Shown here: piece after piece, positions 5,546-62,189 of the stretch
How positions within the stretch are numbered: the stretch's first letter is position 1
Layout: the number at the start of each line of letters is the position of its first letter
Source: Hemiscyllium ocellatum
Taxonomy: Eukaryota
DNA: 64,000 nucleotides
Direction: 5' to 3'
Assembly (NCBI RefSeq): GCF_020745735.1
Contig: NC_083412.1
Coordinates: 74,552,320 to 74,616,319, forward strand
Program-made: the position numbers and the translations under genes
The notes under the pieces: model-generated
Database searches by the model: none
Told to the model about the DNA's origin: nothing
What the model saw: the letters and a program-made list of their open reading frames with translations, nothing else

Positions 5546-6510
5546 TTATATATTATATTGTTATATTATTATCTTCAATTTATCCCCACACTCTGTATTT
5601 CTGCAATAATTTATTATGGCAACATCTTTAATGACAAGTCTGAGCATTTTTTACTCTTTCTGCTTTATATTTTATATATTTAGCAATTCATGAAACAAAA
5701 CATTATATTCCTATAGTAAAACATTATCCTGACAGTGTTCACCTCTTTAACATTTTAGTTATGATAAAGGATCATTTTTATTCTGTCAAAGAGAATCTTT
5801 GGTAATCCTTCTTAATGCTGTATTTTAATTCACCTTAAAAGCTGTTTTGTCCCTGATGTTAGAAACTGCGGTAGAGTAACAAGTTTGATTGAAATGAATT
5901 TTAATGAATAATTTTTAATCAGTAATAGCAAAAAGGCATTGCTTTTAATATAATTAATGTGTTGGCATTATGTAGCTACCTCTAATAACAATGAATTGAC
6001 TTGGCATTTGATTTAGGAAACGTGTCACATGGAAAAGAAATCTCAAATACCATGGTAAAAATCGGAAGGCTTTCTGACAATCAGGATACACTATCTTGTT
6101 AATTAAATGTAGAGTAATTCCACAATGAATAAATTAGTCTCTTAAATCTCATCGCTTGGCAGATATTATATCGTGAACACATACTATTTTTACCAAAGCA
6201 TATTGAGTCAGTATAATGCAAGTTTCAACTAGCTTCAATGGAAAGACATGAAATGGCGAATTGGTCTTATTTAAAAGTGTGAAAATTGCTCCTTTGAAAT
6301 GATTGTAAACTGTAGACGGAGAGCATATGCATGCATTGTTGATTCAGAGTGTGATTTTTTTTAAATGGAGGAGCTACTAAAAAAAACTAAAATCATGGTG
6401 ACTCCTTCAACGGGTCTCCAACCCCAGCAAAGCAGTCAGAATGTGGACAGAAATTAACAAAAAAGGTCAAAAGGGCACAGAAGGTACTTAATAACATGCA
6501 TTTTATGATA

Positions 6511-6711
6511 TGATTTGGAGATAGCTGTGTTGGACTGGGGTGTACAAATGTAAAAATCACACAATACCAGGTTATAGTCCAACAGATTTAACTAGAAGCA
6601 ATAGCTTTTGGAGCGACGCTCCTTCATCAGGTGGTTATGGAGCATCGTTCCGAAAGCTAGTGTGCTTCCAATTAAACCTGTTGAACTATGATCTGGTGTT
6701 GTGTGATTTAA
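6511..6711. mobile_element. PLE-derived inverted hairpin insertion (family C) with hammerhead motifs
   Basis: Arms AAATCACACAATACCAGGTTATAGTCCAACAG.. and ..CTGTTGAACTATGATCTGGTGTTGTGTGATTT; minus arm reads CCTGATGAAGGAGCGTCGCTCCAAAAGCTA; TSD CATTTTAT(G/A)ATA at 6499-6510 and 6712-6723. Confidence 0.8.
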
Positions 6712-6999
6712 CATTTTATAATAGATTTAGACTCTCACTGTACCTTAGATACTTACCTTAGATTGCCTTTATGCTTTGACCTGAAGCAATAATACTTTCC
6801 TCATGTGCATCTTTTTCCATGTTACATATGATGAAAGCATTGTTGGGATATCTACCACATTGCTGTCTAGTCAACCCATTTTCCTGCTTAGTTTTAACAC
6901 TTGACTCTGAACTGTGTTATAATTAGAATGCATCTAATGAAAAACCCAAGTAAATAAAAAATACTTGAATTCATAAGGCAGAATTATTGCAGAATTGTA

Positions 7000-7930
7000 A
7001 TGTTTTAAAACACTTACCACTGATAAGGTACTTTTGAAGTGAGGTCATTGTTGTAATGAAGGGGTGACAGCAATGTGGTGAAAATCAGATAAATGTTTTT
7101 GTGATGGTTCATTCTGGGTGATATGCATTCTTTTGTCATGTGGTTTGATGCCACGATGTTAGTTTGGGCTCAAGAAAGAGTGATTTAACAGAAGAAAAAG
7201 TCACAATTGTCTTCAGTCTTAGACTACACGGTTGGTTCTGTTAGAATGTGTGTTTCTTCAATAAAACCAATTGGCTTTAAAGCGATTGAAGAATTTAGAC
7301 TGCAGTTTGTAGAATGTGAACTTTCTTTACCTGAATTGGCTGTAAAGCCATTCCGGCCCCATTAGTTTAAACGATGCAGCTATTATGTGATTTTCGTAAA
7401 ACACGAGATCACACAAGAATGGAGGTATCGCATTCACGTTATATCAGAATCGACTGTATATTTATTCGAAATACGGTATTATCTGGTAATCATAGCCTTT
7501 GATTTATAATTACATTAGGTTAGGATGAAATGATCATTTTGTGTTCATGTCCTTGTGCCTCTTAAGACTTAATTTAACTTAACTTTTAATTTAACTCCTA
7601 ATTCTAGCATATTTAATCTCCACTCACCTTATGCTCAGTGATGTACAGCTCTGAGACATCATCACAAGGTTACTCCATGATCCTGAAGTTTTTACCACAG
7701 CATACAACAGGGATAATTCTCTGCTTAGTTTCAAAATAGGGCCATCCTGTCTTTTATGTCAACTCAAGCAGGCAGTTGAGGCCTCAGCTTAACACCTCAC
7801 CCAAACAAAAACTCAGCTTCAATAGCGCAATGCTCTCTCATTGGTGAACTGCAGTGTTAGCCTTAATTGTTATGCTCAAGCACTGGTATGGATGATTGAG
7901 AGACCAATGCTATCAATTGAGTCAGAGCTA
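7000..7930 (-). mobile_element. Old tRNA-derived SINE remnant (SacSINE/Deu-like), split by later insertions
   Basis: Tail-like segment 7010-7100 (TACTTTTGAAGTG..TGTTGTAATG) and head-like segment 7770-7930; similar copies at 52050-52430 and 53100-55900. Confidence 0.45.
7224..7458. mobile_element. Tc1/mariner Tigger-like MITE
   Basis: Imperfect TIRs GGTTGGTTCTGTTAGAATGTG / CACGTTATATCAGAATCGACTG with TA flanks; shares CCATTAGTTTAAAC core with 22652-22864. Confidence 0.65.
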
Positions 7931-8099
7931 ATACAACAGGGAAATGATTGACAAGTTGTTCTCCCAACTCAAAAATTCTCCAGTGTCAGCTCACTGATCT
8001 GATTTCTAAGATAAAATAATACTTCATGTGTATACATCCAAACCTATCTTTCATTGATCGAAAGATTATAGTAAATGGGATTGTTCTAAGATTTTGAAA

Positions 8100-11060
8100 T
8101 AGTAAGTGGGAGGGGGCCATACTGGACCTAGTATTGGGAAAGGAGCCTAGCCAAGTGATCAATGTTTTAGTGGGGGAGCTTTTTGAGAATAGTGATCATA
8201 ATTCCATAAGGTTTTGGATACTTATGATTAAGGACAAGAATGGACCTTGGATGAAGGTGTTAAATTGGAGGAAGGCAAATTATAAATGAATTGGGCAAGC
8301 ATTGGATCATATGGATTGCAAGTGGCTATTTGAGGGTAAATCCATTTGACATATGGGAGTCTTTTAATGACCAATTGATGAGAATGCAGGATAAGCATGT
8401 TCCTGTGAAAATGAAAGAAAGACAGGAATGGCAGGATTCAGGACCCTTGAATGACAGAGGAAATTATCAGCTTAGACAAAGAAAAAGGAAGCATACCTAT
8501 ATTCTGGGCAAATAAAAACAGACAAAGCAACTGAAGAATATGGAGAAAGTAGGAAGGAGCTCAAATGGGGAGTTAGGAGGGATAAAAGGAGCCATGAAAT
8601 GTCCTTGGCCAGTGGGTTAAAGAGAATCCCAAAGCATTTTATACATATATTAGGAGCAACAGGGTAGCTAGGGAAAGAATCGATCCATCGATGTTTCGGG
8701 CACAAACCCTTCAACAGGAATGAGGCTTGTGAGCTAAGGAAGTAGACAGATAAATGGGGGTAGGGGGGTGTGGATGGTGGTGTGGGGCTAGGGAAAGGAA
8801 GCTAAAAGTGCGATAGGTAGATGAAGGTGGGGTTAATGGTGATAGGCTGGAGAGGAGGGTGGATGGGACAGGTGGGACACCCGCATGAAGCATCCCCACT
8901 GCCCCAGGGCCAAACACTTTAACCCCCCTCCCACTCCGCCAAGGCCATGCAGGTGCTAGGCCTCCTCCATCGCCAAACCCCAACCACCCAATGTCTGGAG
9001 GAAGAACACCTCATCTTCTGCCTTAGGATCCTCCAACCACATTTGATTAATGTGGATTTCCCAGTTTCCTCATTTCCCCTCCCCCCACCTTATCCTAAAC
9101 CCAGCCTTCTAACTTGGCACCACCTTCATGACCTGTTCTACCTGTCTATCTTCCTTCCCCTCTGTCCCATCCACCCTCCTCTCTGACCTACCACTATTAC
9201 CCCCACCTCCATATCGCACTCTCTGTTATCTTCCCTTCCAGCCCAACACCCTCCCATTTATTTCTGTACTCCCTTGGCTCACAAGCCTCATTCCTGATGA
9301 AGGGCTTATGCCACAAATATTGATTCTCCTGTTCCTTGAATGCTGCTTGACCTGCTGTGCTTTTCCAGCACCTCATTCTGATCTCCAGCATCTGCAGTCT
9401 TCAAGGATATAGGAGGGAGGTTATTTATGGAATAAAACAAAATGTGTGAGATCCTTAATGAGTACTTTACATTGGTATTTACCAAAGAAAGGGACATGAG
9501 GGATGTTGAGGTGAGGGAAAGATATGTGAATACTCTTAGGCAGGTCAAGATAATGAAGGAAAAAGTCTTGGCTATCTTAAAATGTATTGAAGGAAACATG
9601 TTTCCAGGGCCAGATGGGATCTATCTCAGGTTACTGTGGAAGGTAAGGAAGGAAATAACTAGGCCGTTAACAAATATCTTTGCATCATTTTTGGTCTCAG
9701 GCAAGATTCCACATGATTGGAGAATGGCCAATGTTATTCCTTTGTTAAGAAGGTAAACAGAGATAATCCAGATAGTTACAGGCCAGTGAGTCTGATGTCA
9801 GTGGTGGTGAAGCTGTTGGAAAAGATACTGAGAGACAGGATCTATTCACATTTGGAAGTGAATAGACCTAACAGTGGTAGGCAGCAACTGTTTGTATGGG
9901 GAAGGTCATGTTTTACCAACCTGGTAAGATTTTGAGGGAGTGACAAGAATAATTGAAGAAGGAAAGGTTATGGCTGTCGTCTACATGGACTTTAATTAGA
10001 CATTTGTAAGGTATCTCGTGACAGACTGGTACAAAAAGTAGAGTCTCATGGGTTCCAGGATGTGCCGGATACAGAACTGACTTGGTTATAGAAGACAGAA
10101 TGTAGTAGTGGAAAGGTGGTTTTCAGAATGGAGATCAGTAACTAGTGGTGTTCTGTGGGGATCAGTTTGGGATCTTTGTTGTTTGTAATGTATCTAAATG
10201 ATCTGAAGGAAAATGCAGGTGGTCTGATTAGTAAGTTTGCAGGTGACAACAAAACTGGTGGAGTTGTAGATAGTGAGGAAGACTATCAAAGGACACAGTA
10301 GGATATAGATAGAATGCATTTTTGGGCAGAGAAATGGCAGGTGGAGTTTAATTGAGACAAATGTGAGGTGTTGCATTTTTAGAAAACCAAATTCAGGTGT
10401 GAATTCTACAATAAATAGCCAAAACCTGTAGAGCATTGACTTAGAGGGATCTCTGACGGGGGATAAGATGGTCAAGAAAGCATACAGCCCAATTGCTTTC
10501 ATTGGCTGGGGCATCGAATATGTAAGTTAGCAAGTTATGTTACAGCAGTTGGCACATTTGCAATATAGCATGCAGTTCTCATCACCACATTACCAGAAAG
10601 ACATGAATGCTTTGGAGAGTGTGCAGAAAAGGTTTACTAGAATGTTGCCTAGTCTGGAGGGTTTTAGTTTTGAGGAGAGATTGCATACATTTGGATTGAT
10701 TTCACTGGAAAGATAGAGGCTGAGAGGCGACCTGATAAAGCTCCACAAAATTTATGAGAAGTATAAATAGTTTGGATAGTCAGAGACTTTTTCCCAGGGT
10801 GGAAAGGTCAACTACAAGAGGGTACAGGTTCAAAGGGAGAAGGAGAAAGTTTTTCACACAGTGTGTGGTGGGTGCTTGGAACGCACTGCCAGAGGAGATG
10901 GTGGAAGCAGGCACATTAGCAACATTTAAGGTGTATCTTCTTAGATACGTGAATGTGAGGTGAACAGGGGGATAGAGACTGTGTATGAGCAACAAGTAGC
11001 AGGTTGAAATTCAGATTGTCAATCGGCACAGGCTTGATGGTTGAAGGTGCTGTAGTGTAT
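8100..11060 (+). mobile_element. CR1 LINE (end of APE, RT, 3' end), decayed and interrupted by a PLE at 8687-9401
   Basis: LDLVL/SDHN, PGPDGIY, YRPVSLMS, FAGD (from FADD), RGDLI motifs over several frames. Confidence 0.9.
8687..9401. mobile_element. Neptune-like PLE 3' end, inverted pair (family A)
   Basis: Plus arm encodes GIY-YIG C-terminus MQVLGLLHRQ..LEEEHLIFCL..LQP, then 3'UTR and CTGATGAAGGGCTTATGCC; minus arm 8687-8880 repeats the UTR and hammerhead. Confidence 0.85.
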
Positions 11061-19411: not shown

Positions 19412-19536
19412 GGCAAAAGTGAGGACTGCAGATGTTGGAGATCAGAGGCTAGATTAGAGTGGTGCTGGAAAAGCACAGCAAGTAAGACAGTGTCTGAGGA
19501 GCAGGTAAATCGATGTTTCAGGCAGGAGCCCTTCCT
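19412..19536 (-). mobile_element. PLE terminal fragment (family A, tailed)
   Basis: AAAGTGAGGACTGCAGATG..AAAGCACAGCA..CGATGTTTCAGGCAGGAGCCCTTC. Confidence 0.75.
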
Positions 19537-22500
19537 GCCTTTGTGGATGAGAGAGCTAATAGTGTGCTTCATTGATTGTTGGACATCCTAAGGCAATGAA
19601 AGGGGGCTTATAAATGCTAATGCTTTCACAGAAAATGGTTATATTTAGTACTTCTGCTAATAAGTATAATGACAGACTCACAACCTAATAAATTTCTACG
19701 TCTAGATATAATTTCTCCTCTGGATTTTCTCTAGCTATGTGTTTAAATTTAGCCATAATTATATAGAAAAATGAACCTTTACTATTGGAGGTGACATTTG
19801 CTCTAAAATCTCTCGATTTCACCATGTAATATCCTAGGGGTTGCTTACTGAGGCACACTGGTGTTATGATGTGAAAAGTAGAAGATGCATCCCACATGAA
19901 CCACCTCATCCAGTACAAGAACTGAAATTGTGCTGTTGGCAACATTAAGAGTCAAACTAATAAGCAATTGAGTTAACCAGCCCCTTTTGGTTACAAATCA
20001 ACTGACTATTATTTCACAATTTTATAATGACTGAAAATTTTGAGATTGAAATATAAAATCATTCTCACATGCTCTAAATCATTAGTGGTTTCTCTCAGGC
20101 AATGATTCCTTTTAAGCATATATTTCAAAACTGAATTACAAACACAGCAAAGTACTCCTGCAGGGAGGTTGATCACAAACATGTCACTGGCTCATTCAGT
20201 GATGACTTGATGTACTATACCTCTGAACAAATGATGTTTTAGTCATTAGAACTGGGCAATTGAGAAGTATGGAATTTACTGCTGAGCCCCACATCAGGTA
20301 ATAGCATTTTATTTATAAGCTGTGACTTTTCAGGTCAGTCAAAGCAAACTTGAGGCCAAAATTATTCCTTACGATAAATTTACTGAAAAATAAATGCAAG
20401 AAAGAAGTGATTGAATTTGTAGAGTAAGCACTAATGGACTATTCATCAGTATTCAGCACTATTCTGAGGAGTCCTTCATTTCCAAGAACCCATTAACCCA
20501 CAGCAAAATAGTTGGAATAAAAATAATTTATTCTTCCTATGGGCCAATCATGGAAAATTGGTATAAATTGCTCAGCACTACAAGCCATAGTAAAGGTGAA
20601 TATTTCCTACTACACTCTATTTGCAATAATTATTGATAATTTGTGAATTTAAAATCATAAGACACTTTTAAAAGTGTGTAGTACAGAGGTTTTTCTGCAA
20701 TAGAAGTGTGTGGTCAGGTTACTATTGAGGTAGCAAGGTTACACAATTTGTGCGTTTACCAAAGCAACGACTTTTGTTTTCCCAATACCTACACAGAGGG
20801 AGTTTTGGCTTTTCCAAGAATGGAAGTTGGATGAGATGACTGGGTTTGGCAACACCATGGTGGTGTTGAGAGAAGTAACAGAGTGTAAGGGTTGGAAGTC
20901 ATCCAAAGTGCTAATAAAAGCTGATTTTATCTCTTTGGATAATCAAGCAGCATCAAACAGACAGGAAATAATGTGACTGCCATTGGTTGCCAGTTGTTTT
21001 GGTGGAAAATGGCAACTGGTGACAAAACACTTCCAGCATAGAATCAGGACACTTCACCTAACAGATCCATGATTGTGGTTTAGGTTTCATGTAAGCCTTT
21101 ATAGAAACCTCTTGCTAATCATTAACTGTACTCTGTTCCCTTAATGTATCATTTTCCTCCTTTATCCATAGCTCCTCCTCAAACATCTTAACTCCACCTC
21201 AAGATGGGGAGCTCCAGACTCCAACTGTCCTCTGCTTAAATAAATTTCTCTTGAATTCCCTACTGAATTTATTCATCACTTATAGATCCTAGTTTTGGTC
21301 TCATCCACAAGTTCCTTATCAATTCCCTTCACAGTTATGTTGGATTACATAGGATACATGGCATAGACATAAACTATTGGGCTTATTGGGCTCATTTTAG
21401 TGATTATTTTCCACTTAAGCCTCCTCTCTCTTTTTCTCATTTAAATCTACTATTATAAGCATCTCCTCTCATTTACCTCAGCAGGCCTGGCAGCATTTAT
21501 TCAGAGAGAAACAGAGTTGTCATTTCAACCTTAAAATGACTGTTCTTCAGAATTGAAGACAGAGGTGGAAAGATAATGGGTTTTATGCTGCAAAACAAGT
21601 GGGAATGAGCAAGTGAAACAGAGGGACAATCAGGAAAATGTTAGAAACAAGGAAGTTTTAGAGGTCACCCAGCCACCCCACACCATTCCCACAGTGTCTA
21701 GTTTTCTTGGTATTGTATACACTATAGCTGACCTATATTCTGCTATTAATATCTATTACTAACATCTTCACTGGACCTGTCTTGCTTCCCTATAACTATG
21801 ACTGCTTCCTTTGCCTTTTATTCTTTAACAACTGTGCCCAGGATCACAATGATATCCAGAAGCTCCCACATTCTCCCGGGTGTAACTTGTCAACTGCCTT
21901 GCCATCTTTATTGTGTGTTAATTAGTTCATTATTTTAATTAACTTCTAATTATTAAATGCTAAACCTAGATTCAGTTTAGGATTGCTAGTAAAATCTAAC
22001 AAGAATAATAAACAGCTTACAATTATTATTGGCAAAAGTCATTAATGACTTTTAAAAAGAAATTATACCTTTTCAATATCAATATTATACACACAGCACT
22101 TAACACAGTTGTTCATGTGATTCATTCAGCTAACAACCCACAACTCTCTTCTGCTGTTACTGTGTGATTTTTCCCAGTTGGGTGTTCTTCAGAAGCTAGA
22201 GCTGTAAACCCAACGGACTTAAGAGCCCTGATCTCAATTTATTCTCTCCTAAACATTTCACATTCCCTTTCACGTTCTTTTTATGTATTGTAAATGAACT
22301 TATTACAGGCCTTTTCCTTAATGGCAATTTTGTAATTACCTTGTAATTACTGGCTGGTATTTTTCTTGCTTTTTAGAGGGATATTTTTCACCTGGATTCG
22401 ATTAAATGCTGGACTTCTCTTGGTTTGCCTGTAAATGTTTCAATTTTATTTGCCCTTGTTCCTTTCACATTCCCTTAGCATCACTTTTATCCTAATTTAT

Positions 22501-22864: not shown

Positions 22865-23596
22865 ACATAAACGGAGATTGCAAGTGTTCTTTTAGATATC
22901 TAAAAGGAAAGAGAGAGAGGCAAGAGTAGACATTGTATGGCTGGAAAAGGAGGCTGAAAAGGTACTAATGGGAACGCAGAAATGGCGGAGGATCTGAATA
23001 GGAATTTTGCATCAGTTTTCACAGTGGAAGACACCAGCAGTCTACCAGAACTTCAAGACAAGCAGGGGGCAGAGGTGAGTGTAGTGGCTATCATTAAGGA
23101 GAAAGTGCTGGAGAAGCTGAAAGGTCCAAATGTGGATAAATCACCCAGACTAGATAAACTGCACCTCAGAGGTCTGAAGGAAATAACTGAGGAGATCGAT
23201 GGTACCTTTCAGGAATCACTGGAGTCAGGAAGAGTTCTAGAGGACTGGCAAATACCTAATGGAACACCCCTGTTTAAGAAGTGAGGGAAGCAGAAGACAG
23301 GAAACTATAAGCTGGTTAACCTGACCTCAGTTATTATTTAGAATCTATTATGAAGAATGAGATTGCAGAGTACTTGGAAGTGCATGGTGAAATAGGGCTT
23401 AATCAACATGGTTTCATCAAGAGGGCCCATACCTGACAAATCTGTTAGTATTCTTTAGGAGTAATGAGCAAGTTAAGCAAAGGAGAGTCAGTAGATATCA
23501 TCTATTTGGCCTTTGAAAAGGTGCTGCACAAGAGGCAACTAAATAAACTAGAAGTCCTTGGTGTTAGGGGCAAAGTACTGGTGTGGATAGAGGATT

Positions 23597-23816
23597 CAAG
23601 AAGTGTAGCACTGGAAAAACACAGCAGGTCAGGCAGCAACTGAGGAACAGGAAAGTTGACATTTTGGGTATAAGCCCTTCATCAGAAATATGTGTCCCCA
23701 CATTCCTGATGGACAGCTTATACCCAAAACGTCTGCTGTCTCTGTTCCTGGGCTTTTCCAACACCACATTTTTTGACTCTGATTCTAGCATTAGCAGTCC
23801 TCACTTTCTCTTTTCA
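23597..23816. mobile_element. PLE family A inverted hairpin insertion
   Basis: Inverted arms around CCCTTCATCAG..CCTGATGG; TSD ATAGAGGATT at 23587-23596 and 23817-23826. Confidence 0.85.
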
Positions 23817-24142
23817 ATAGAGGATTGGCTGACTGGCAGAAGGCAGAGAGTAGAGATAAAAGGGTATTTTTTTCAGAAAGGCAGCGAATGACAAGTGATG
23901 TTCTGCAGGGGTCTGTGTTGAGACCACAACGATTCACATTATACATGAACGAGCTGGATGAAGGAACTTATGGCATTTGCAGATGGCACAAAGGTATGTG
24001 GAGGGACAGGTAGTGTTGAGGCAGCAGAGAGGCTGCAGAAAGATTTGGACAGGCTAGGAGAGTGAGCAAAGAAGTAGCAGAAGTACTACAATATGGGAAA
24101 AGATGTGGATGTGCACTTTGGTAGAAAGAATAGAGGCATAGC

Positions 24143-24351
24143 TGAAAATGTGTTGCTGGAAAAGCACAGCAGGTCAGGCAGCATCCAAGGAGCAGGAGAA
24201 TCGATGTCTCGGGCATGAGCCCTTCTTCAGGAAGGGCTCATACCCGAAACGTCGATTCTCCTGCTCTTTGGATGCTGCCTAACCTGCTGCACTTTTCCAG
24301 CAACACATTTTCAGCTCTGATCTCCAGCATCTGCAGTCCTCACTTTCTCCT
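24143..24351. mobile_element. PLE family A inverted hairpin insertion
   Basis: About 85 bp near-perfect arms; TSD AGAATAGAGGCATAGC at 24127-24142 and 24352-24367. Confidence 0.92.
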
Positions 24352-25099
24352 AGAATAGAGGCATAGCCTACTTTCTAAAAAGGGAAAGCCTTTGGATATC
24401 TGAAGTCCTGGTTCAGGATTCACTTAAGATTAGCATGCAAATTCAGTTGACAATGAGGAAGGAAAATGCAATTTTAGAATTCATTTCAAGAGGGCTACAA
24501 TAGCAGAGTTGCATTGCTGAAGCTGTATAAGGCTCTAGTCTGAGCACATTTGAAATATTGTGAGCAGTTTTGGGCCCCCTATCTAAGGAAAGACATTCTA
24601 GTGTTGAAGAGGGTTCAGAAGAGGTTTACAAGAATGATCCCAAGGATGAAGGCCTTGTTCCTATGTGGAGCGATTGTGGATTCTGGATCTTTACTAGATG
24701 AAGTTTAGAAGAATGAAGGGGGCAGGATCTGACTGAAACTTACAGAAGACTGAGAGGCCTATATAGCTTGGATGTGGAGAAAAAGTTTCTATTAGTAGGA
24801 GAGACCATGGCCAAAGGGCACAGCCTCAGAGTGAAGGGAGTACCCTTTAGAACTGAGATAAGGACAAGTTTTTTCATCCAAAGTGTGTTTAATCTGTGGA
24901 ACTCATTGCTGGAGGCCAAGTTGTTGAATGTCTTTAAGACAAAGATAGATAGGTTCTTGATTAGTAAGGGATCTAGGGATAGTTAGAATGGAGGAGAATG
25001 GGGTTGAGAAATTTATCAGCCATGATTGAATGGTTCAGCAAACTCAATGGGCCGACTGGTCTAATGCTTATATCCTATAAGGTCTAATAGCTGAATCTC

Positions 25100-39027: not shown

Positions 39028-39084
39028 TATTGGAGCCTCCTGTGAAGCGCTGCTTTGATGTTTCTTCCGGTATTTATAGTGGTT

Positions 39085-40372: not shown

Positions 40373-40382
40373 AGTAAATTTT

Positions 40383-41310: not shown

Positions 41311-41831
41311 ATCTAACTGTCCCAGTATTTCTGTATTGGCTAATCAGAATATCGGAAGTTCACTTTGTCAATTCTCCGTCTCTCCCACTGCCTCACTCTT
41401 GCTTTTGCTGTCATCCTCTACTACTCTCACCACCTATTATATTTACTCTTTCCTAACTTCCTCTCTATGATGATAATGCTTTAACATGTTTAGATGATAT
41501 AAGAATTTCTTCTTCCTATGGTCTGGGATATCTGTCAAAAAAGTCTTCGAGTGAAAAGTGAGGTCTGCAGATGCTGGAGATCCAAGCTGAAAATGTGTTG
41601 CTGGTTAAAGTACAGCAGGTCAGGCAGCATCCAAGGAACAGGAAATTCGACATTTCGGGCCAGAGCCCTTCATCAGGAAGGAGGAGAGGATGCCAGGCAG
41701 GCTAAGATAAAAGGTAGGGAGGAGGGACTTGGGGGAGGGGCGATGGAGATGTGATAGGTGGAAGGAGGTCAAGGTGAGGGTGATAGGCCGGAGTGGGGTG
41801 GGGGCGGAGAGGTCACGAAGAGGATTGCAAG

Positions 41832-43032
41832 TTAGGAGGGCGGTGCTGAGTTCAAGGGAATCGACTGAGACAAGGTGGGGGGAGGGGAAATGAGGAAACT
41901 GGAGAAATCTGAGTTCATACCTTGTGGTTGGAGGGTTCCCAGGCGGAAGATGAGGCGCTCTTCCTTGAACCGTCGTGTTGTTATGTTCTGGCGATGGAGG
42001 AGTCCAAGGGCCTGCATGTCTTCGGTGGAGTGTGAGGGAGAGTTAAAGTGTTGAGCCATGGGGTGGTTGGGTTGGTTGGTCCGGGTGTCCCAGAGGTGTT
42101 CCCTGAAGCGTTCTGCAAGTAGGCGGCCTGTCTTCCCAATATAGAGGAGGCCACATCGCGTGCAGCGGATGCAATAGATGATGTGTGTGGAGGTGCTGGT
42201 GAATTTGTGGCGGATATGGAAGGATCCCTTGGGGCCTTGAAGAGAAGTAAGGGAGGAGGTGTGGGCGCAAGTTTTGCATTTCCTGCGGTTGCAGGGGAAG
42301 GTGCCGGGAGTGGAGGTTGGGTTGGTGTGGGGTATGGACCTGACGAAGGAGTCACAAAGGGAGTGGTCTTTGCGGAACGCTGATGGGGAGGGGAGGGAAA
42401 TATATCCCTGGTGGTGGGGTCCGTTTGGAGTTGGCGAAAATGACAGCGGATGATACGCTGTATACGGAGGTTGGTGGGGTGGTAGGTGAGAACCAGTGGG
42501 GTTCTGTCTTGGTGGTGGTTGGAGGGGCGGAGGAGCGGGAAGTGGAGGAGATGCGATGGAGGGCATCGTCGATCATGTCTGGGGGGAATCTGCGGTCCTT
42601 GAAGAAGGAGGCCATCTGGGCTGTACGGTATTGGAACTGGTCCTCCTGGGAGCAGATGTGGCGGAGACGAAGGAATTGGGAATATGGGATGGAGTTTTTA
42701 CAGGGGGCAGGGTGGGAGCAGGTGAAGTCCAGGTAGCTGTGGGAGTCAGTCGGTTTATAGTAGATGTCTGTGTTGAGTCGGTCACCCGAGATAGAAATGG
42801 AAAGGCCTAGGAAGGGGAGGGAGGAGTCTGAGACAGTCCAGGTGAATTTGAGGTTGGGATGGAAGGTGTTGGTAAAGTCGATGAACTGTTCAACCTCCTC
42901 ATGGGAGCACGAGGCAGCGCCGATACAGTCATCGATGTAGCGTAGGAAAAGGTGGGGGGTGGTGCCAGTGTAGTTGCGGAAGATGGACTGTTCCACATAT
43001 CCTACAAAGAGACAGGCATAGCTGGGGCCCAT
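41832..43032 (-). pseudogene. Second, inverted copy of the PLE RT/GIY-YIG region
   Basis: ORFs 42352..43032 and 41832..42566, frameshifted by a 13-bp deletion relative to the plus arm. Confidence 0.9.
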
Positions 43033-43064
43033 GCTTCCCCGGTCCCCAACGCCTTATCTTCACG

Positions 43065-44479
43065 ATGGACATCCAGTCCCTGTACACCTCCATCCCCCAT
43101 CACGAAGGACTCAAAGCCCTCCGCTTCTTCCTTTCCTGCCGCACCAACCAGTACCCTTCCACTGACACCCTCCTTCGACTGACTGAACTGGTCCTCACCC
43201 TGAATAACTCCTCTTTCCAATCCTCCCACTTCCTCCAAACTAAAGGAGTTGCTATGGGCACCCACATGGGCCCCAGCTATGCCAGTCTCTTTGTAGGATA
43301 TGTGGAACAGTCCATCTTCCGCAACTACACTGGCACCACCCCCCACCTTTTCCTCCGCTACATCGATGACTGTATCGGCGCTGCCTCGTGCTCCCACGAG
43401 GAGGTTAAACAGTTCATCAACTTTACCAACACCTTCCATCCCGACCTCAAATTCACCTGGACTGACTCAGACTCCTCCCTCCCCTTCCTAGACCTTTCCA
43501 TTTCTATCTCGGGCAAGCGACTCAACACAGACATCTACTATAAACCGACTGACTCCCACAGCTACCTGGACTACACCTCCTCCCACCCTGCCCCCTGTAA
43601 AAACTCCATCCCATATTCCCAATTCCTTCATCTCCGCCGCATCTGCTCCCAGGAGGACCAGTTCCAGTACCGTACAGCCCAGATGGCCTCCTTCTTCAAG
43701 GACCGCAGATTCCCCCCAGACGTGATCGACGATGCCCTCCACCGCATCTCCTCCACTTCCCGCTCCTCCGCCCTTGAGCCCTGCCCCTCCAACCGCCACC
43801 AAGACAGAACCCCACTGGTTCTCACCTACCACCCCACCAACCTCTGTATATAGCGTATCATCCGCTGTCATTTCCGCCAACTCCAAACGGACCTCACCAC
43901 TAGGGATATATTTCCCTCCCCTCCCCATCAGCGTTCCGCAAAGACCACTCCCTTCATGACTCCCTCGTCAGGTCCACACCTCCCATCAACCCAACCTCCA
44001 CTCCCGGCACTTTCCCCTGCAACAGCAGGAAATGCAAAACTTGAGCCCACACCTCCTCCCTTACTTCCCTCCAAGGCCCCAAGGGATCCTTCCATATCCG
44101 CCACAAATTCACCAGCACCTCCACACACATCAGCTATTGCATCCGCTGCACCCGATGTGGCCTCCTCTATATTGGGGAGACGGGCCGCCTACTTGCAGAA
44201 CGCTTCAGGGAACACCTCTGGGACGCCCGGACCAACCAACCCAACCACCCCGTGGCTCAATACTTTAACTCTCCCTCCCACTCCACCGAAGACATGCAAG
44301 TCCTTGGACTCCTCCATCGCCAGAACATAACAACACGACGGTTGGAGGAAGAGCGCCTCATCTTCCACCTGGGAACCCTCCAACCACAAGGGATGAACTC
44401 AGATTTCTCCAGTTTCCTCATTTCTCCTCCCCCCACCTTGTCTCAGTCGATTCCCTTGAACTCAGCACCGCCCTCCTAA
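43065..44479 (+). pseudogene. PLE reverse transcriptase plus GIY-YIG endonuclease (5'-truncated, with stops)
   Basis: ORFs 43065..43853 and 44252..44479 with RT motifs and endonuclease C-terminus. Confidence 0.9.
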
Positions 44480-44630
44480 CCTGCAATCCTCTTCCTGACC
44501 TCTCCACCCCCACCCCACTCCGGCCTATCACCCTCACCTTGACCTCCTTCCACCTATCACATCTCCATTGCCCCTCCCCCAAGTCCCTCCTCCCTACCTT
44601 TTATCTTAACCTGCCTGGCATCCTCTCCTC

Positions 44631-44666
44631 ATTCCTGATGAAGGGCTCTGGCCCGAAACGTCGAAT
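44631..44666 (+). ncRNA. Minimal type I hammerhead ribozyme motif (intact core; predicted cut after C44662)
   Basis: ATTC CTGATGA A GGGC TCTG GCCC GAAAC GTC GAAT: stem I ATTC/GAAT, stem II GGGC/GCCC, palindromic ACGT stem III, GUC triplet. Confidence 0.85.
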
Positions 44667-46309
44667 TTCCTGTTCCTTGGATGCTGCCTGACCTGCTGTG
44701 CTTTAACCAGCAACACATTTTCAGCTCGTATCTGTCAAAAAATCCAATTACTATCTTAATTATCTTGTATGACCACTAAACCTTACCTTCAGAGATTCAC
44801 ACTATAAAAGTATTAGGACTAATACTTTTCTCTGATTTACACTGTTTGAGTTGTGGCCTAATTGTTATTCTTTCTTTTCCTGCATCACTTCTCATACTCC
44901 TGTACATCTCTCCAGAAACATGGACACATAATCAAACTTTGAGTATTCATTTCTCTGTCTTAAAAAAACTCTTCCTTAAGGAACTTTAATCAACCTCTTA
45001 TTTGTAATCATAGATCAACTCAGTGAACAAAATGCCTTGGATACATTTGGGGAATCTTTCACAGCAAGTAATTTTTAAAAAATCCCAATCCTGCAGGTAT
45101 TTGTGATAATCTGCCTTAATCATTGTTTTCAAAGTCTGATGGTATTTTTCCAAGTCGCCCTGTGTTTGTGGGTGATATACAATGGCCTTCAACGCACCTA
45201 TTATTACAACCAAAATGACCTATTCTGTGCTGAAAAATGATAGATGTAAAGTTGGATCCTTGATCTGACTGTATTTCTATTGGTAGTCCATTACAAATAA
45301 AAAGCTGAGTTGATTTCTACACCAATACTTCAGCTACAATTGTCCTGAAAGGAACAGCTCTGGAAATTGGATTGTCATATCCATAATATCAAATTTATAC
45401 TGGTGACCTGCTTTCAATTTTTGTAATGCCCGATATAATCTATTATTGCTGTACTGAATGGGTCTTCAAAAACTCTTTTTGGTATTTGTGGGCCAAATGA
45501 CCTGTTTTTGTGCAGTAATATTAAAGGTGCTGGTTACAAATTGAGGTTTCCCCACTATCTGAGATGCATGGCATGTTTTACAGAACTGAATTGCTGTTTA
45601 TGAAGTCTTGGCCAATAAAACAACCGTTATCGATACATGTGTTTTATGTATTCCGTATGTGTTTTGATATAGCAATATCAAAGTGTTGATGAACAATCAT
45701 CCATTTCTCACCCGCAGATTGATGAGGATGTGTCCACCTCCTCATTCTAAAATAGCACTCTGGAATTCCTTTAGCATCAGCCTCAGTGTGAGCTTATTGT
45801 GTTAATTTGCTTAACTCTAGATCTCTGAAGAAGATATACTAAGCACATCTTTTGAATTATCCCCTCCTTGAAGAAAGTTTTGATGGTTGTACTAACTGCT
45901 GTGGTGTTATTTTGTCCTCAGATGGTGGCCATTGTTCAGCCGTTGCTCTGGTAGCCACATGCTATGGAAAAATAACCTGGAAATTATTACTTGTTCTGTC
46001 TCTTTAATTGCACTTGGATTTTCAGAGATTATGTGTGAAACTATACATTTTACATCAGAGAAATCATTATTCAGGAGTCAGTCAACTCCATCCTGGATAA
46101 TTTCTAAACACCTCTTACCACCACTGATCAGAACATCAAATCATATTTTAAATGGACTTAATACAATTTAGTGGCATATACTCTCCACTTATCCTGTTTA
46201 GTAAAGCTTTGGCTTTCATTGTACTCTTTGAATGAAGAACTATGCCCTTCTTCAAGGAATTGCTTTGAGTATCTTCTGTGTGAGTTATGTTGTGGGTTTA
46301 TCTTTAGTA

Positions 46310-55380: not shown

Positions 55381-55650
55381 AACTCTAAGTCCCTTGGGAT
55401 AACTCTGCTGTTCTTCTCAAAACTATTCCCATGGATTCTTTTACATTGATCTGAGACAGTAGGTAAGCCTGAGATTAACACACAAGCAAAATTTGCTGGA
55501 TGTTGAAAATCCAGAATTATATCAAAAGTATTCAGAAGGCCTCCCGAGCCTTTGCAGAAAGCAAAATTGATCTGTAACCTTCCCTCAGAACTTATCATAA
55601 CATCTTATCAAAACAACAGCCTATCAACAATGCAGCATCCCTTCAAAGTG

Positions 55651-55806
55651 GCAAATGTGTTGCTGGTTAAAGCACAGCAGGCCAGGCAGCATCTCAGGAA
55701 TAGAGAATTTGACGTTTCGAGCTGAGATGCTGCCTGGCCTGCTGTGCTTTAACCAGCAACACATTTGCAGCTGTGATCTCCAGCATCTGCAGACCTCATT
55801 TTTTAC
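55651..55806. mobile_element. PLE family A inverted hairpin insertion
   Basis: Perfect ~46-bp arms GCAAATGTG..ATCTCAG / CTGAGAT..CATTTGC; TSD TCCCTTCAAAGTG at 55638-55650 and 55807-55819. Confidence 0.92.
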
Positions 55807-57027
55807 TCCCTTCAAAGTGCACTGCTGCATCAGCCTAGACTTTTCTGCTCACGTTTCTGGAGTGAGATTTTAACCCAAACCCTCCTGTTGTGTCAGTAAC
55901 TTAGTTATGTCACCAGCAAAGCCAAATTAGGCTTTTTGTTTTGCTATCTGTGAGGATGTAACGTTTGTATGACATGTCGCATCACTTCAGATGGTAAACC
56001 ACATTATCCTCATCAAACTCACAAGATCACAGATTTAATATAATACTGAAGAGGCCATTGGCCCATTGTATCTGTACTGTCTCTTCAAATGAGCATTTTA
56101 TTTAGTTCCATTTTTCTGCTTTCTCCCTGTAACCCTGAACTTCGTTACTTTTCAGATAAACAGCTAACTCCCTTTTGAATGTTTCAATTGAACTTGCCTT
56201 CACCACAAATTGTCAAACAGGGCAATGCAGACCCCCAACCACTAACTTTGTTCATGGAATGTGGGCATTCCTGGTTAGGCATTTATTTTTTTATTGCTGG
56301 AGACAGGGACAGCATTGAAAGATCCCCTTCAGAAGATGCAGAGCACGGCAAACTATGTTAGCTGGACACAGAATGATGAACTTTGTCCTTTTATCCATGA
56401 AAGGACAGTTTTGGAGCTGTCATGGAAAATGTGAGTTGTTCTGTCAGAAATTCCAAAGGCCGCACACATGCTTGGAGAGAAAGTGGAGGTGTCTGTCTCT
56501 AAAATGAGTGGTATAATGTCTGAAGTATTTGTACTGATATCCATAGATATAATATCCATCTGCATGAAGAATCAGGTGTGACTGGTCCCTACCAGTTTTC
56601 TGCATATGCAGTCTCACATTTTAAAAGGATGGAGAAAGTCCTTATCATGGCCATTCAGTGCGCCATTGAAGTGCAGCAAAGTGCTCTTGGCTAATAGGTA
56701 GGAATAGGTAAACTAAAAGATGGAAGCTATTTAGAAAGGACAGTGGGCCCTTTTTTTAAAGGCACTCCCACTTCTTGTTCTCTTTACCCTTCTACTCCAA
56801 GTCTTTGATTTATTTATTGTCACATATATTTTGTTACAAAATCCAGTGAAAAAAACCCAATGTGCTGCCTTCAAACGAAATGTTCAAATCTGCATTTCTG
56901 GAAGTGACCAGTCTTTGAGAGGCACTCAAGTGCTCCAAAACCTAAAGGAATTCTTATTTAAGCAATTTACTTGTCAGAACTGAGGAATGAACAGCCCACT
57001 TTCTGGTCTGTTGAAGCCACAAAGCTT

Positions 57028-58020: not shown

Positions 58021-58774
58021 CACTAATAGTCAAAGGAAGATGAAGACTTCTTAGTTGTAAAAGGATTTTTTTTAAAGGTAATGTAATCACCACAGATCAC
58101 AGCATTTAATTGAGCTGGTGTGTGTGTGTGTGTGTGTGGGGCGGGGGGGGTGGGGGCGCGGGGGGGAACAATAAGTTATTTTAATGCACTGGAAGATATT
58201 ATGACTGTGAGAATGAGTTGTATCCATGAAAGAAATGGAGCAATATACGTGACTTCAACCATAGGGGTTAAGGAACAGTAATTTTAAAAATTAATTTTAT
58301 AAGTAAGTGACACTTGAAGTTAACAAGAAGGCACTGCATAATGTCAAACAATATTAAATTACACAAGACATGCAGTAAGGCGTGAAATTTAAAAGTGGCA
58401 AGAAAAAAAGATTCATCAGAATAAAAAGAAACAACTTGCATTTTTAACCTAATGAAATATCTGAAGATATTTCACAGGAGCATTATCAAGCAGAAATTTG
58501 ACAGTGGGAACCAACAGAGATATTGGAACAGATGACCAAGAACTGGACAAACAAATAGGATTTAAGAAGCATCTAATGTTATAATCTCAGCTAATGTTAA
58601 TACCGGACAAGTCAGAACCAGTTTAAGACCTGGCTTGAGAGACTATAAATTATACTTCTGTTTTTGTTTACCTGGAAGGTAAGTCAATTAACATATTCAC
58701 AAGACATAAAATGTTACACAAAAGGAAAAACATGAACTCTGTTTACACTGTACCAAGAACTATTAGAACAGAAT

Positions 58775-58993
58775 GGAGAAAGTGGGGACTGCAGATGCTG
58801 GAGCTCAGTGTTGGGAATGTGGTGCTGGAAAAGCACAGCAGGTCAGGCAGCATCCAAGGAACAGGGGAATTGACGTTTTGGGCATTAGACCTTCATCAGG
58901 ACAGGCTGATGAAGGGCTCATGCCTGAAGCGTCGCTTCTCCTGATCCTTGGATGCTGCCTGACCGGCTGTGCTTTTCCAGCACCACACTCTCG
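58775..58993. mobile_element. PLE family A inverted hairpin insertion
   Basis: Arms meet at CTTCATCAGG-ACAGG-CTGATGAAG; TSD ACTATT(A/G)GAAC at 58759-58769 and 58994-59004. Confidence 0.88.
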
Positions 58994-59367
58994 ACTATTG
59001 GAACCCATGCACTACAAATATCAGGAAGAAAGATTCAAATCTTATACCCCAACATCCTGACAAATGCCCAAAGCTCAATGAAAGGTTACACCTGTATTCA
59101 TGTTAATGCTCCTTATGGTACAGCTATAATTACTTTCTTTCCAGCAAATGTCTTCATTCACTCAATATTCTTGTGATAAAGGCTTATAGTATGTTGCTAT
59201 TACCTGGGAAATAAGAGTTGAAGGTTGAGACAAATGTAATTTGCTTTTACTTCTATGAATTAGACATTTAAAAAAAAAAGGTCAGAAAGTCATTTCTGAG
59301 TAGTAAGGTTGAAATAGTCTTTTCATGAAAACATGTGATTGAAGTGTAGTGAAGCAATTACCATCGG

Positions 59368-59414
59368 AGGTGGTGGGGAGGGGGGGGGGCGGGGGGGGGG
59401 GGGGGGGGGGGGGG
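59368..59414 (+). repeat. Poly-G tract (G-quadruplex-prone)
   Basis: About 40 nt almost pure G; a similar (TG)n plus G-run at 58118-58168. Confidence 0.8.
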
Positions 59415-59697
59415 TGTTGAATGATGAGTGGTTCCTAGGTTCAGTTTGATAGAGGCCATATGGAGATTAAGCTCAGAAGAAGAAAAGCATAATCATAAGG
59501 ACATTTTGTTCCAATTTGTAAAAGCATTCAAGGAATGAGATTTTCTCAAAGTTTTCAGGACATTGGAACAGTAAAGAAATCGTAATATGTTTCAATCGTC
59601 CAAACAGAACAGTTAGGAGAGACAGAAAAGTAAGAAATTAAAGAGTTAATATCAGAAAAGGATATTGCTGGAAAATGATTGAATATTTCTTATTGAT

Positions 59698-60915
59698 AAA
59701 TATGTGACTTAGCTCACTGAGCTTGAAGGTTTGCTTTCAGATGTTTCGTCACCATACTAGGTAGCACCATCAGGGAGGGTCTCTGTTGAAGTGCTGGTGG
59801 TATATCCCACCTCTCTATTTTTAGATTTTGGTTTCTTAAGGTGGGTGATGTAATTTCTGTTTTTTCAAGGGAAGGTAGATAGGGTCTAAATCGGTGTGTT
59901 TATTGATGGAGTTCTGGTTAGAATGCCATACCTCTAAGAATTCTCATGAATATCTTTGTTTCACCTGTCCTAGGAGTTATGTGTTGTCCCATTCAAAGTG
60001 GTGTCCTTCTTTGTCTGTATATATAAAAACTAATGATAGTGGGTTGTGTCTTTTGGTGGCCAGTTGGTGTTCATGTATCCTGCTGACAAGGCTTCTGCTA
60101 GTTTGTCCGATATAGTGTAGTTTACAGTTCTTGCATGGTGGAGAAAGTGAGGTCTGCATATGGTGGAGATCACAGCTGAAAATGTGTTGCTGGAAAAGCG
60201 CAGCAGGTCAGGCAGCATCCAAGGAACAGGAGATTCGACGTTTCGGGCATTAGCCCTTTTTCAGGGCTTATGAAGCCATTCCTGAAGAAGGGCTTATGCC
60301 AGAAATGTCGAATCTCCTGTTCCTTGGATGCTGCCTGACCTGCTGCGCTTTTCCAGCAACACATTTTCAGTTCTTGCATGGTATCTTGTAAATGACATTA
60401 GTTTTGCTGGTGGTATCTAATGGATCCTTTAGGTTCATTAGTCGCTGTTTAAGTGTATTGGTAGGTTCGTGGACTACCATGATGCCAAAGAGTCTGAGTA
60501 GTCTGGAAGTAATTTCTGATATGCCTTAGATGTAAGATAATGTGGCTATAGTTTTGGTTGCATTGTGTCTGCTTGACTGGGACAACACACACACCCTAAG
60601 AGAGATGAAACAAAGACACGCCCAAAAATTCTTAGAGGCATCGCATTCTAACCAGAACTCCATCAATAAACACATCGATTTAGATCCTATTTACCTTCCC
60701 TTGGAAAAAAAGAACCAGAAATGACATCACCCACCTTAAGAAACCAAGACCTTATAAATAGAGAGGCAGAACATGCTACCAGCACTTCACCGGGGATTCT
60801 CACTGATGATGTTACCAAGTATGGTGAGGAAACATCTGAAAACAAACCTTCAAGCACAGTGCTAACTTACATGCTTAACATCAATCTGAGTGACAAATCT
60901 CCTCAAAAATTGCCA
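59698..60915. mobile_element. Poseidon-like PLE inverted pair (family B)
   Basis: Minus arm NVIYKIPCKNC..YIGQTSRSLVSRIHEH; plus arm DWDNT..KFLEASHS..INKHIDLDPIY; degenerate hammerheads at about 59738-59776 (-) and 60800-60839 (+); TSD ATTTCTTATTGAT at 59685-59697 and 60916-60928. Confidence 0.88.
60140..60367. mobile_element. PLE family A inverted hairpin nested in the family B GIY-YIG motif
   Basis: TSD CAGTTCTTGCATGGT at 60125-60139 and 60368-60382. Confidence 0.92.
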
Positions 60916-62189
60916 ATTTCTTATTGATTTGTATGTTAAGATTTTTAGGAATTCTATTATTATTTGCTTTTTAAAATTCTTTTGTGTGCCATAACTTTGA
61001 TATTCTCTTATTAAATGTACATTGGCAGCCTTGTATGAATATGTTCAGTAACTGACCATCATAGTAATCAAATTACAAAAGAAAAACCTGTGATCTATTT
61101 GCACTGAGATCTGACCTGTCTAGTATTGCATCACTGGGTTCATTATACCTTTTTTGTAGTCAATGTCTCTTCTTGAGACACTGAAATAAAATTCTAACTC
61201 AGCTCGCTTATTATGTAACATGGATACCTTAACCTCATGCGTTATAGGATATTTCCTGACTGAAATCTCCATAGCCTTCTATTTCTGACTTCCTTCTAAT
61301 CAACTCATATTTACTTTTCTGCAGCACTGGCTGGTCAACAACTAATAAAAATGCCTTCATTGTTAAGGGTCTCTTTGATTGAACTTGCCTCTGTTTGAAT
61401 AAACTTGCCTCTGTAAAGCTTCTGGGCCTCCTTCACTCTCTCTGGATTTTAAGCCCCAAATGATCAAACAACCAATTATCTCCCCAGCTTTTGTTTTGCC
61501 TTTAGACTGTATTTGAAGCCTTGGAAATTATTTTTTAAACTTATTATTTAAAATGACTGTTAAGTTTTTCCAGTAGTAAAAACTAAAATCCATTTTTTTG
61601 TCCACTTCAGAATGCAACTTCCCATATAATAACAATATAATCCAAGCGTTCACTACAATAAGAAGGAGAGAGCAATAGAAAGTCTCAGGAAGGAAATTCC
61701 ATTGACTTGGTTATATATGTAACTAGATTGCAAATGCTCTATATAACATGAACTGGAAGAAGTAAAATACATGCAGGTGCTGTGCTCTGCTGTTGCCAAT
61801 TCAGGATTTTCCAATCTGCCCATTCAATAGTGCAGCTGCTCTCATTTATTGTCTGTTGCTGTTCAAAAGGAATTTGCATTGAAAGTCTGTTTTTGTGCAT
61901 TGCTTGTTTTGTTGAACTAAAGTGTTCGTGATGTCTTAGTCTGTATCTCAATCTGTGGAAAAATGGAGCCAACACTATTGGGTGGCTGTGAAGTGATGTA
62001 CTAAACGCTTTTAATTTTTCAGTCAAAAACATCCCGATGTCCATTCTTGACTTCTCAGCTCTCAGGCTGGCATGATATCAAGCAAGGTTATGCTGCCTTA
62101 TTGAGTAGAGTGCCGAGAATGCACGTTCTAATGTCATTCTAATGGCATTGCAGTCATCGGAATTTGATATCCAAATTAACATACAATCT

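What the first reader, a model, noticed from the sequence alone, without database searches (positions are those of the whole stretch)
6499..60928. Recurrent rule: PLE hairpin insertions with one tailed arm, one arm lacking the 32-40 nt tail, and 10-16 bp TSDs
Seen in sequence: at least eight independent inverted insertions from three families (6511, 23597, 24143, 41543, 55651, 58775, 59698, 60140) share one architecture. It is TSD, arm, inverted arm, TSD, with the element 3' ends pointing outward. One arm always runs to the full terminus (family A: ..TGATCTCCAGCATCTGCAG(A/T)CCTCACTTTCTC). The other always stops at nearly the same internal point 32-40 nt earlier (tails about 35, 32, 38, 32 and 36 nt in five family A copies; about 40 nt in families B and C). 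Short 1-3 nt overlaps between TSD and element end are common (AGC at 24140, CAG at 60368, ACT at 58994 and 27456). Established: PLEs form inverted pLTRs and carry an optional 30-40 bp tail. Inference: both 3' ends of a staggered GIY-YIG cut prime reverse transcription by microhomology at two distinct, fixed RNA positions, on two RNAs or on a tandem transcript. The cDNAs then join head-to-head. Classic single-template twin priming cannot give overlapping arms.
Basis: partly seen in the sequence, partly recalled or inferred. Interest (0 to 1): 0.85.

Follow-up and report, generated by a model that had tools for sequence, protein, structure and literature searches.

The report
Penelope retroelement hairpin insertions, one-sided tail
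The window holds many small "hairpin" insertions made by Penelope-like retrotransposons, each with a short extra tail on one arm only; the pattern is real, but both this architecture and its likely cause (both cut DNA ends prime copying at two nearby RNA sites) are already published.

Summary
All eight named sites are head-to-head inverted copies of Penelope-like element (PLE) 3' ends. Each is flanked by a 10-16 bp target-site duplication (TSD). Exactly one arm reaches the full terminus (T); the other stops 30-43 nt earlier (P). The 3.2-kb copy encodes RT plus GIY-YIG, and the arms carry minimal hammerhead motifs. Contigs of two related species skip hairpin 55651 and keep a single TSD copy, so it went in as one event. 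Family-wide, contig ends cluster at P and T.

The rule is not absolute. One old inverted copy (8688-9399) has no TSD and no P end. Two "solo" copies carry 7-13 nt inverted stubs.

The architecture is textbook PLE (PMC3846280, PMC8557442). The proposed mechanism was shown in vitro in 2024 (PMC11167929): both strands are cut and extended, reverse transcription starts at two adjacent internal RNA sites, and the tail is the stretch between them.

What this window adds:
- Every event has exactly one T end (8/8 inverted, 4/4 solo).
- Neither arm can be a copy of the other.
- Microhomology is enriched at P junctions.

First readers noted the same pattern on other pieces of this genome. Low novelty, modest interest.

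The parts
6499..6723 (.). Family B hairpin. Insertion 6511-6711, tailed arm on the left (sense on the - strand), untailed arm on the right. TSD CATTTTAT(G/A)ATA at 6499-6510 and 6712-6723.
   Evidence: The T end ...TCTCCAAATCAT is shared with solo copy 37881. Five nt (CATTT) overlap between TSD and element at the P junction.
23587..23826 (.). Family A hairpin 23597-23816, tail on the right, TSD ATAGAGGATT. Old copy: arms about 79% alike, with a deletion in the right arm.
   Evidence: Excision restores the LINE frame ...VWIEDWLTGRRQRV, and paralog 29167-29204 spans the site.
24127..24367 (.). Family A hairpin 24143-24351, tail on the right (about 35-38 nt), TSD AGAATAGAGGCATAGC (16 bp).
   Evidence: Excision restores ...HFGRKNRGIAYFLKRESL, and paralog 4899-4960 spans the site. 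AGC/GCT overlap at the P junction.
41529..44742 (.). Long family A-type inverted pair 41543-44728. The arms are about 1460 nt and encode the RT C-terminal part plus GIY-YIG. Tail (about 43 nt) on the left. The untailed right arm is 231 nt longer at its 5' end. TSD TATCTGTCAAAAAA.
   Evidence: (Pfam RVT_1 and GIY-YIG).
55638..55819 (.). Family A2 hairpin 55651-55806, tail on the right. The untailed left arm has 25 nt of 5' sequence that the tailed arm lacks. TSD TCCCTTCAAAGTG (13 bp).
   Evidence: Orthologous empty site with a single TSD in two related species, and family-wide ends at 55772 (P) and 55806-55808 (T).
58759..59004 (.). Family A hairpin 58770-58993, tail on the left, TSD ACTATT(A/G)GAAC.
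59685..60928 (.). Family D inverted pair 59698-60915 with a different min-hammerhead. Arms about 300 nt and 82% alike. Tail (30-39 nt) on the right. TSD ATTTCTTATTGAT. Hairpin 60140 is nested in its centre.
   Evidence: The untailed arm aligns at least 21 nt further 5' against family E than the tailed arm does.
60125..60378 (.). Family A hairpin 60140-60363, the youngest (arms 96% alike), tail on the left. TSD CAGTTCTTGCATGGT. The target TTTACAG resembles the element's TTTTCAG at P.
27313..27469 (+). Family A2 'solo' copy 27327-27455 with a full tail. It has only a 13-nt inverted stub at its 5' end. TSD ACTACGATGTTGTG.
19416..19546 (-). Family A solo 5'-truncated copy with tail and a 7-nt inverted stub. 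The TSD is weak (TTGTGG).
32728..32960 (-). Family A-long solo 5'-truncated copy (about 235 nt) with tail and an intact min-hammerhead. TSD unclear.
37881..37980 (-). Family B solo copy with tail, truncated at the GAAAGC box.
8688..9399 (.). Exception: an old inverted family A-long insertion in a LINE. It has no TSD. The untailed arm ends at GAAACATCGAT, with ATCGAT microhomology to the target. The tailed arm ends inside the tail at CTGCAG.
   Evidence: paralogous empty site 53600-53740.

Best explanation
Each site is one integration event of a 5'-truncated, endonuclease-bearing Penelope-like element.

Proposed steps:
1. The GIY-YIG nuclease makes a staggered double cut 10-16 bp apart.
2. One target 3' end primes reverse transcription at the full terminus T. 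This happens in every event.
3. In the hairpin events the other 3' end primes a second, independent reverse transcription. It starts at an internal site P, 30-43 nt upstream, helped by 2-5 nt of base pairing.
4. Both cDNAs usually run to about the 5' edge of the hammerhead motif and are joined head to head by template switching or repair.
5. Filling the stagger gives the TSD.

Shown here: the architecture, single-event insertion with a true TSD, two discrete termini, one T end per event, and arms that are not copies of each other.

Taken from PMC11167929: both strands are cleaved and extended, and there are two RNA start sites that bound the tail.

Inferred: T is the first-strand site and P the second-strand site; how the arms are joined; how many RNAs are used.
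For: - PLE identity: RVT_1 followed by GIY-YIG in both arms of 41543. The min-hammerhead boxes CTGATGA-A-GGGC..GCCC-GAAAC-GTC are in the arms and fit the descriptor of PMC4209133.
- One T and one P end in 8 of 8 TSD-flanked inverted insertions. A T end in 4 of 4 solo copies. One tail motif per family-A insertion.
- Single event with a real TSD: contigs of two related species join 55637 to 55807. LINE frame and paralogs confirm 23597 and 24143.
- Family-wide, contig ends with unrelated continuations pile up at 55772 (P) and 55806-55808 (T) (table 7).
- Two independent copying runs: the untailed arm has 5' sequence that the tailed arm lacks. This is 231 nt in 41543, 25 nt in 55651, at least 21 nt in 59698 and about 5 nt in 24143 and 60140. 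The tailed arm in turn has the tail.
- Junctions form anew at each event: the centres differ between 55651 and 27340, which belong to the same subfamily, and among all A copies.
- Published biochemistry. Published architecture.
Against: - In vitro, the start-site choice did not differ between strands, and the start sites had no homology to the target. Neither strict T/P pairing nor microhomology is predicted by the published data.
- The sample is 8 inverted plus 4 solo copies from one 64-kb window.
- There are exceptions: 8688-9399 and the stubs at 27340 and 19416.
- Sequence alone cannot prove that P is a start of synthesis rather than a stop or a trimming point.
- No RNA data were examined.
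Confidence: 0.8

Rival explanations
1. Fold-back (self-priming) model. There is only one priming, at T. The cDNA then snaps back on itself and copies its own sequence. This second synthesis stops at P because the tail region is still covered by the RNP. Later unfolding and replication gives the inverted duplication.
For: - Self-priming was proposed for PLE palindromes in PMC3846280.
- Centres lie at or near the naturally self-complementary hammerhead helix II.
- The 7-13 nt stubs at 19416 and 27340 look like short fold-backs.
- Every event has exactly one T end.
Against: - The untailed arm contains 5' sequence that the tailed arm lacks. This is 231 nt in 41543, 25 nt in 55651 and at least 21 nt in 59698. 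It therefore cannot be a copy of the tailed arm's cDNA.
- In vitro, both strands are extended from RNA.
Confidence: 0.1
2. Hairpin master model. The short hairpins are a non-autonomous, MITE-like or retrozyme-like family. Its master RNA is already arm-loop-arm-tail and is copied whole by PLE reverse transcriptase. The one-sided tail would then be inherited, not made at each insertion.
For: - The size is uniform, about 210-230 bp.
- The element is very abundant: summed contig depth over it is 10^4-10^5 times the flanks, though this is not a copy number.
- The common 5' boundary lies about 5 nt upstream of CTGATGA (loose end at 55722).
- 27340 and 19416 could be read as 5'-truncated hairpins.
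Against: - Centres differ in position and symmetry between copies, even within subfamily A2 (55651 versus 27340).
- The same T/P asymmetry holds for a 3.2-kb coding pair and for unrelated families B and D.
- 60140 has a filler segment at its centre.
Confidence: 0.07
3. DNA transposon (MITE) with terminal inverted repeats, or two separate retro-insertions that happened to land at the same spot.
For: The palindromic look and the presence of TSDs.
Against: - TSD length varies from 10 to 16 bp.
- The ends are asymmetric.
- The arms are the 3' end of an RT/GIY-YIG element.
- A single TSD brackets both arms, and both arms are absent together in two related species.
Confidence: 0.02

Closest known systems
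Canonical EN+ Penelope-like element insertions: inverted pLTR plus one-sided 30-40 bp 'tail' (Arkhipova et al. 2013, PMC3846280; Craig et al. 2021, PMC8557442)
   Same: - Head-to-head inverted 5'-truncated copy.
[quoted passage not shown]
- An inverted pLTR about 37 bp shorter than the full one.
- Variable TSDs of 8-15 bp.
- A hammerhead motif in the repeat.
   Different: Most copies here are minimal (about 220 bp, no ORF). They stop at the 5' edge of the hammerhead. There are no direct pLTR tandems in this window. The one-T-end-per-event regularity has not been quantified in those papers.
PAc (Poseidon of Anolis carolinensis) in vitro TPRT (Frangieh et al. 2024, PMC11167929)
   Same: - Both target strands are cleaved and extended.
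- Reverse transcription starts at two adjacent internal RNA sites.
- The tail is the stretch between the two sites.
- The geometry is similar. PAc starts at +111-118 from hammerhead stem II (the ORF start). Here T lies about +117 and P about +82 from stem II (my count).
   Different: In vitro, no strand preference for either site and no homology to the target were seen. Here the two ends of one event always differ, and P junctions show 2-5 nt overlaps.
L1 twin priming (5' inversions)
   Same: The second target 3' end primes on the element RNA and produces an inverted segment within one TSD-flanked event.
   Different: The L1 segments come from one RNA and do not overlap, and the internal priming site is not fixed. 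Here both arms cover the same 90-1460 nt, and the second start is fixed to within about 10 nt. There is no poly(A).
Animal non-LTR retrozymes and min-hammerhead repeats (Cervera & de la Pena 2014, 2020; bioRxiv 10.64898/2026.07.22.740005)
   Same: Non-coding PLE-derived sequences that carry type-I or minimal hammerheads and are present in huge numbers.
   Different: Retrozymes are direct tandem repeats thought to move through circular RNA. The copies here are dispersed inverted pairs with TSDs.

Membership tests
EN+ Penelope-like elements | Single ORF with reverse transcriptase followed by a C-terminal GIY-YIG endonuclease | tested here: met
   ORFs in both arms of 41543-44728: RVT_1 (E 1.2e-07, YIDDC motif) and GIY-YIG (E 7.3e-05), in that order. 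Both bit scores are only just above Pfam's cut-offs. The copy is 5'-truncated, and PLE-clade phylogeny of the RT was not done.
EN+ Penelope-like elements | Inverted and/or direct pseudo-LTR arrangement with an optional 30-40 bp tail at one end | tested here: met
   Eight inverted insertions, each with one tail of 30-43 nt. No direct tandem pLTR was seen.
EN+ Penelope-like elements | Minimal or type-I hammerhead motif in the repeat | tested here: met
   Motif CUGAUGA + 1 nt + 4-bp helix II + GAAA + palindromic C15.2/G16.2 + UC, found in families A, D and E and degenerate in B. It fits the descriptor in PMC4209133. Rfam models give no hit, as expected for motifs without helix III. Cleavage was not tested.
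EN+ Penelope-like elements | Variable-length TSDs from a staggered cut | tested here: met
   TSDs of 10-16 bp. A single copy at the empty orthologous or paralogous sites.
Two-site internal initiation on both strands (PAc mechanism) | RNA-templated synthesis starting at P and at T from nicked target 3' ends | not testable with these tools
   Only the products are visible. Discrete ends at 55772 and 55806-55808 and arms that are not copies of each other are consistent with it.
L1-type twin priming | Non-overlapping direct and inverted segments of one RNA, with a variable internal priming point | tested here: not met
   The arms overlap over their whole shared length, and the second end point is fixed.
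MITE / DNA transposon | Symmetric terminal inverted repeats and a fixed TSD length | tested here: not met
   The ends are asymmetric and the TSD is 10-16 bp.
Animal retrozymes | Direct tandem repeats of a hammerhead-bearing unit | tested here: not met
   No direct tandem of the units in the window.

The most novel reading that the evidence does not exclude
In vivo the two initiation sites are used in an obligatorily coupled way. Every integration has exactly one T start. The second strand, when it primes on RNA, always starts at P with a few nt of pairing. This would imply an asymmetric, probably dimeric, RNP that holds the two nicked ends about 35 nt apart on the template or templates. The published in vitro system, which saw no strand difference and no homology, does not show this. 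The flood of about 220-bp hairpins would then be dead-on-arrival products that stop at the hammerhead edge.
Probability: 0.35. Interest if true: 0.55.

Novelty: new member of a known kind. Interest (0 to 1): 0.3.

Why it matters
PLE integration is the least understood retrotransposition pathway. This window gives clean in vivo products that agree with the 2024 in vitro two-site, two-strand model.

It adds three testable refinements:
- one full terminus per event;
- independent copying of the two arms;
- microhomology at the internal site.

For annotation, these abundant palindromes should be masked as PLE fragments. They should not be called MITEs, miRNA precursors or new hairpin genes.

Tried and rejected
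- Rfam at gathering threshold over the whole window found nothing. Permissive Rfam on 58700-61000 gave no hammerhead hit, only sub-threshold miRNA-precursor look-alikes caused by the palindromes.
Empty-site tests for 58775, 59698 and 60140 could therefore not be run. Both read-laying runs are now used.
- A scan of metagenome contigs for the tail motif found nothing.
- Consensus RNA folding of tailed arms predicts a stem between an arm segment and the tail that encloses P. It has no compensatory changes, and the z-scores are weak, -0.4 to -2.2. I do not rely on it.
- No target-site motif was evident at the TSD edges by eye.
- The 2026 retrozyme preprint does not discuss tails or inverted insertions.
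- The 99% inverted pair at 10514/11733 is a LINE fragment, not a PLE.
Full report
**What is there.** I read the sequence at each site and aligned 17 family-A arms, all oriented toward their outer ends.

In 23597, 24143, 41543, 55651, 58775 and 60140, one arm runs to ...GATCTCCAGCATCTGCAG(A/T)CCTCACTTTCTC(C). The partner arm ends within about 10 nt of ...CACATTTTCAG(CT). Family B (6511) and a third family (59698, my 'D') show the same asymmetry with unrelated sequences; their tails are about 36-41 and 30-39 nt.

A script that searched for flanking direct repeats found TSDs of 10-16 bp at seven of the eight sites. The 59698 TSD I read by eye. The tail motif ATCTCCAGCATCTGCAG occurs once per family-A insertion: 9 true hits against 0.24 expected by chance.

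**Identity.** Both arms of the 3.2-kb pair at 41543-44728 encode the C-terminal part of a reverse transcriptase (YIDDC) followed by a GIY-YIG nuclease. That combination is specific to Penelope-like elements. The coding strands show that the 3' ends point outward.

The arms carry CTGATGA-A-GGGC...GCCC-GAAAC-GTC. This is the helix-III-less minimal hammerhead that Cervera and de la Pena described in PLE repeats (PMC4209133). Rfam models do not detect it.

**Are these single insertions with real TSDs?** Yes, wherever I could test it.
- Contigs of two related species (organisms B and C, which share about 0.28 of the sampled 31-mers) run from 55637 straight to 55807. They lack the whole 169-nt hairpin with its tail and one TSD copy, and they keep a single TCCCTTCAAAGTG (records 9 and 24).
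- Hairpins 23597 and 24143 sit in a LINE. Removing each together with one TSD copy restores a continuous RT frame (...VWIEDWLTGRRQRV... and ...HFGRKNRGIAYFLKRESL...).
- Paralogous LINE copies in the window cross both sites without interruption.

**Family-wide signal.** The same read-laying run picked up thousands of paralogous contigs. Contig ends that continue into unrelated sequence (agreement 0.36-0.4) cluster at 55772, which is exactly CAGCT| = P, and at 55806-55808 = T.

The continuation of the inner end of the left arm is conserved (ATAAGCCCTTCATCAGGAA) and then diverges. Most copies therefore end about 5 nt upstream of CTGATGA (table 7). Contig depth is not a copy number, but over the element it is 10^4-10^5 times the flanks.

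**Limits of the rule.**
- 8688-9399 is an old inverted pair of the same family. A paralogous empty site shows no TSD. Its untailed arm ends at GAAACATCGAT, with ATCGAT microhomology to the target. Its tailed arm stops inside the tail.
- 27340 and 19416 are essentially solo copies with a tail. They carry 13-nt and 7-nt inverted stubs that do not reach P.
- The four solo copies (19416, 27340, 32728, 37881) all end at T.

The more general regularity is therefore one T end per integration event. This holds fully in 12 of 13 events, counting 8 inverted and 4 solo copies. The thirteenth, 8688-9399, has a single truncated tail. For the eight TSD-flanked inverted pairs, independent choice of end would give all-mixed pairs with p <= 0.004.

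**Mechanism.** Three observations bear on it.

First, neither arm can be a copy of the other. The tailed arm has the tail, and the untailed arm has 5' sequence that the tailed arm lacks:
- 231 nt of RT-coding sequence in 41543
- 25 nt in 55651
- at least 21 nt in 59698
- about 5 nt in 24143 and 60140

This argues against a fold-back in which one cDNA copies itself. It argues for two separate copying runs from RNA.

Second, the centres differ in position and symmetry even within one subfamily (55651 versus 27340). The same asymmetry also holds for a coding 3.2-kb pair and for unrelated families. This argues against a hairpin master that is copied whole.

Third, strict overlaps between TSD and element at the P junction are 3, 3, 2, 0, 0, 1, 5 and 1 nt. 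Looser readings give 6/7 matches at 60140, ATCT at 41543 and ATCAAT at 59698. Four of eight junctions with at least 2 nt gives a binomial p of about 0.001. The two A2 copies also overlap by 2 and 3 nt at T.

**Comparison with the literature.** The architecture is already described as characteristic of PLEs:
- A purified Anolis PLE protein cleaves and extends both strands.
- The geometry also agrees. PAc starts at +111-118 from hammerhead stem II. Here T lies about +117 and P about +82 (my count).

That paper saw no strand difference in site choice and no homology to the target. The strict T/P pairing and the microhomology seen here are therefore modest additions, not contradictions of the model. 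A literature search found no later mechanistic work.

**Verdict.** These are unannotated members of a known class that behave as the class is known to behave. The residual novelty is the possible obligate coupling of the two start sites in vivo. It rests on 12 events in one window, plus unchecked first-reader notes of the same pattern elsewhere in this genome.

It does not exclude one RNA being copied twice with strand displacement.

Noticed in passing
window 55773-55808 (table 5c) and 41543-41555: Rare contigs of the same species join the T end (55808) back to 55773-55779 with GA/GAA/GAAA between, so the tail is repeated in tandem. The tailed end of 41543 also runs on as ...CACTCGAAGAC. The RNA beyond T may carry a second ATCTCC... 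unit, and so a possible third start site.
   Followed up: partly
tails at 24317-24351, 6511-6551 (-), 60877-60915: The tails of three unrelated families (A, B, D) all contain ATCTCC. In A and B a tail segment is complementary to an arm segment 37-40 nt upstream of P (GGATGCTG/CAGCATCT and TGTTGGACT/AGTCCAACA). P would then sit inside a stem-closed loop, reminiscent of the stem-loop start site reported for PAc. There is no covariation within a family and the z-scores are weak.
   Followed up: partly
window 38917-39350 (- strand): A further PLE family ('E') with an intact min-hammerhead (CTGATGATGTTCCCTAGCCAGGGAACGAAAC at 39024). It is about 70% like family D and has an internal direct repeat of about 75 nt at 39060-39250. 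Its ends and TSD were not determined.
   Followed up: no
window 10514-10605 and 11733-11824: A 92-nt inverted pair, 99% complementary, 1127 nt apart. It is made of LINE RT-like sequence and is not a PLE. It could be a recent local inversion or duplication, or an assembly feature.
   Followed up: partly
window 23300-24800: One CR1/L2-like LINE RT fragment took two independent family-A hairpins about 320 bp apart (23597 old, 24143 younger).
   Followed up: yes
window 59363-59415: A G run of about 50 nt, with one C, lies between hairpin 58775 and the family D element.
   Followed up: no
window 58841-58964: The hairpin gives a sub-threshold Rfam match to a plant miRNA precursor model (MIR847, 38 bits against a gathering score of 184). 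This is an artefact of the palindrome, but such hairpins could mislead miRNA predictors.
   Followed up: yes
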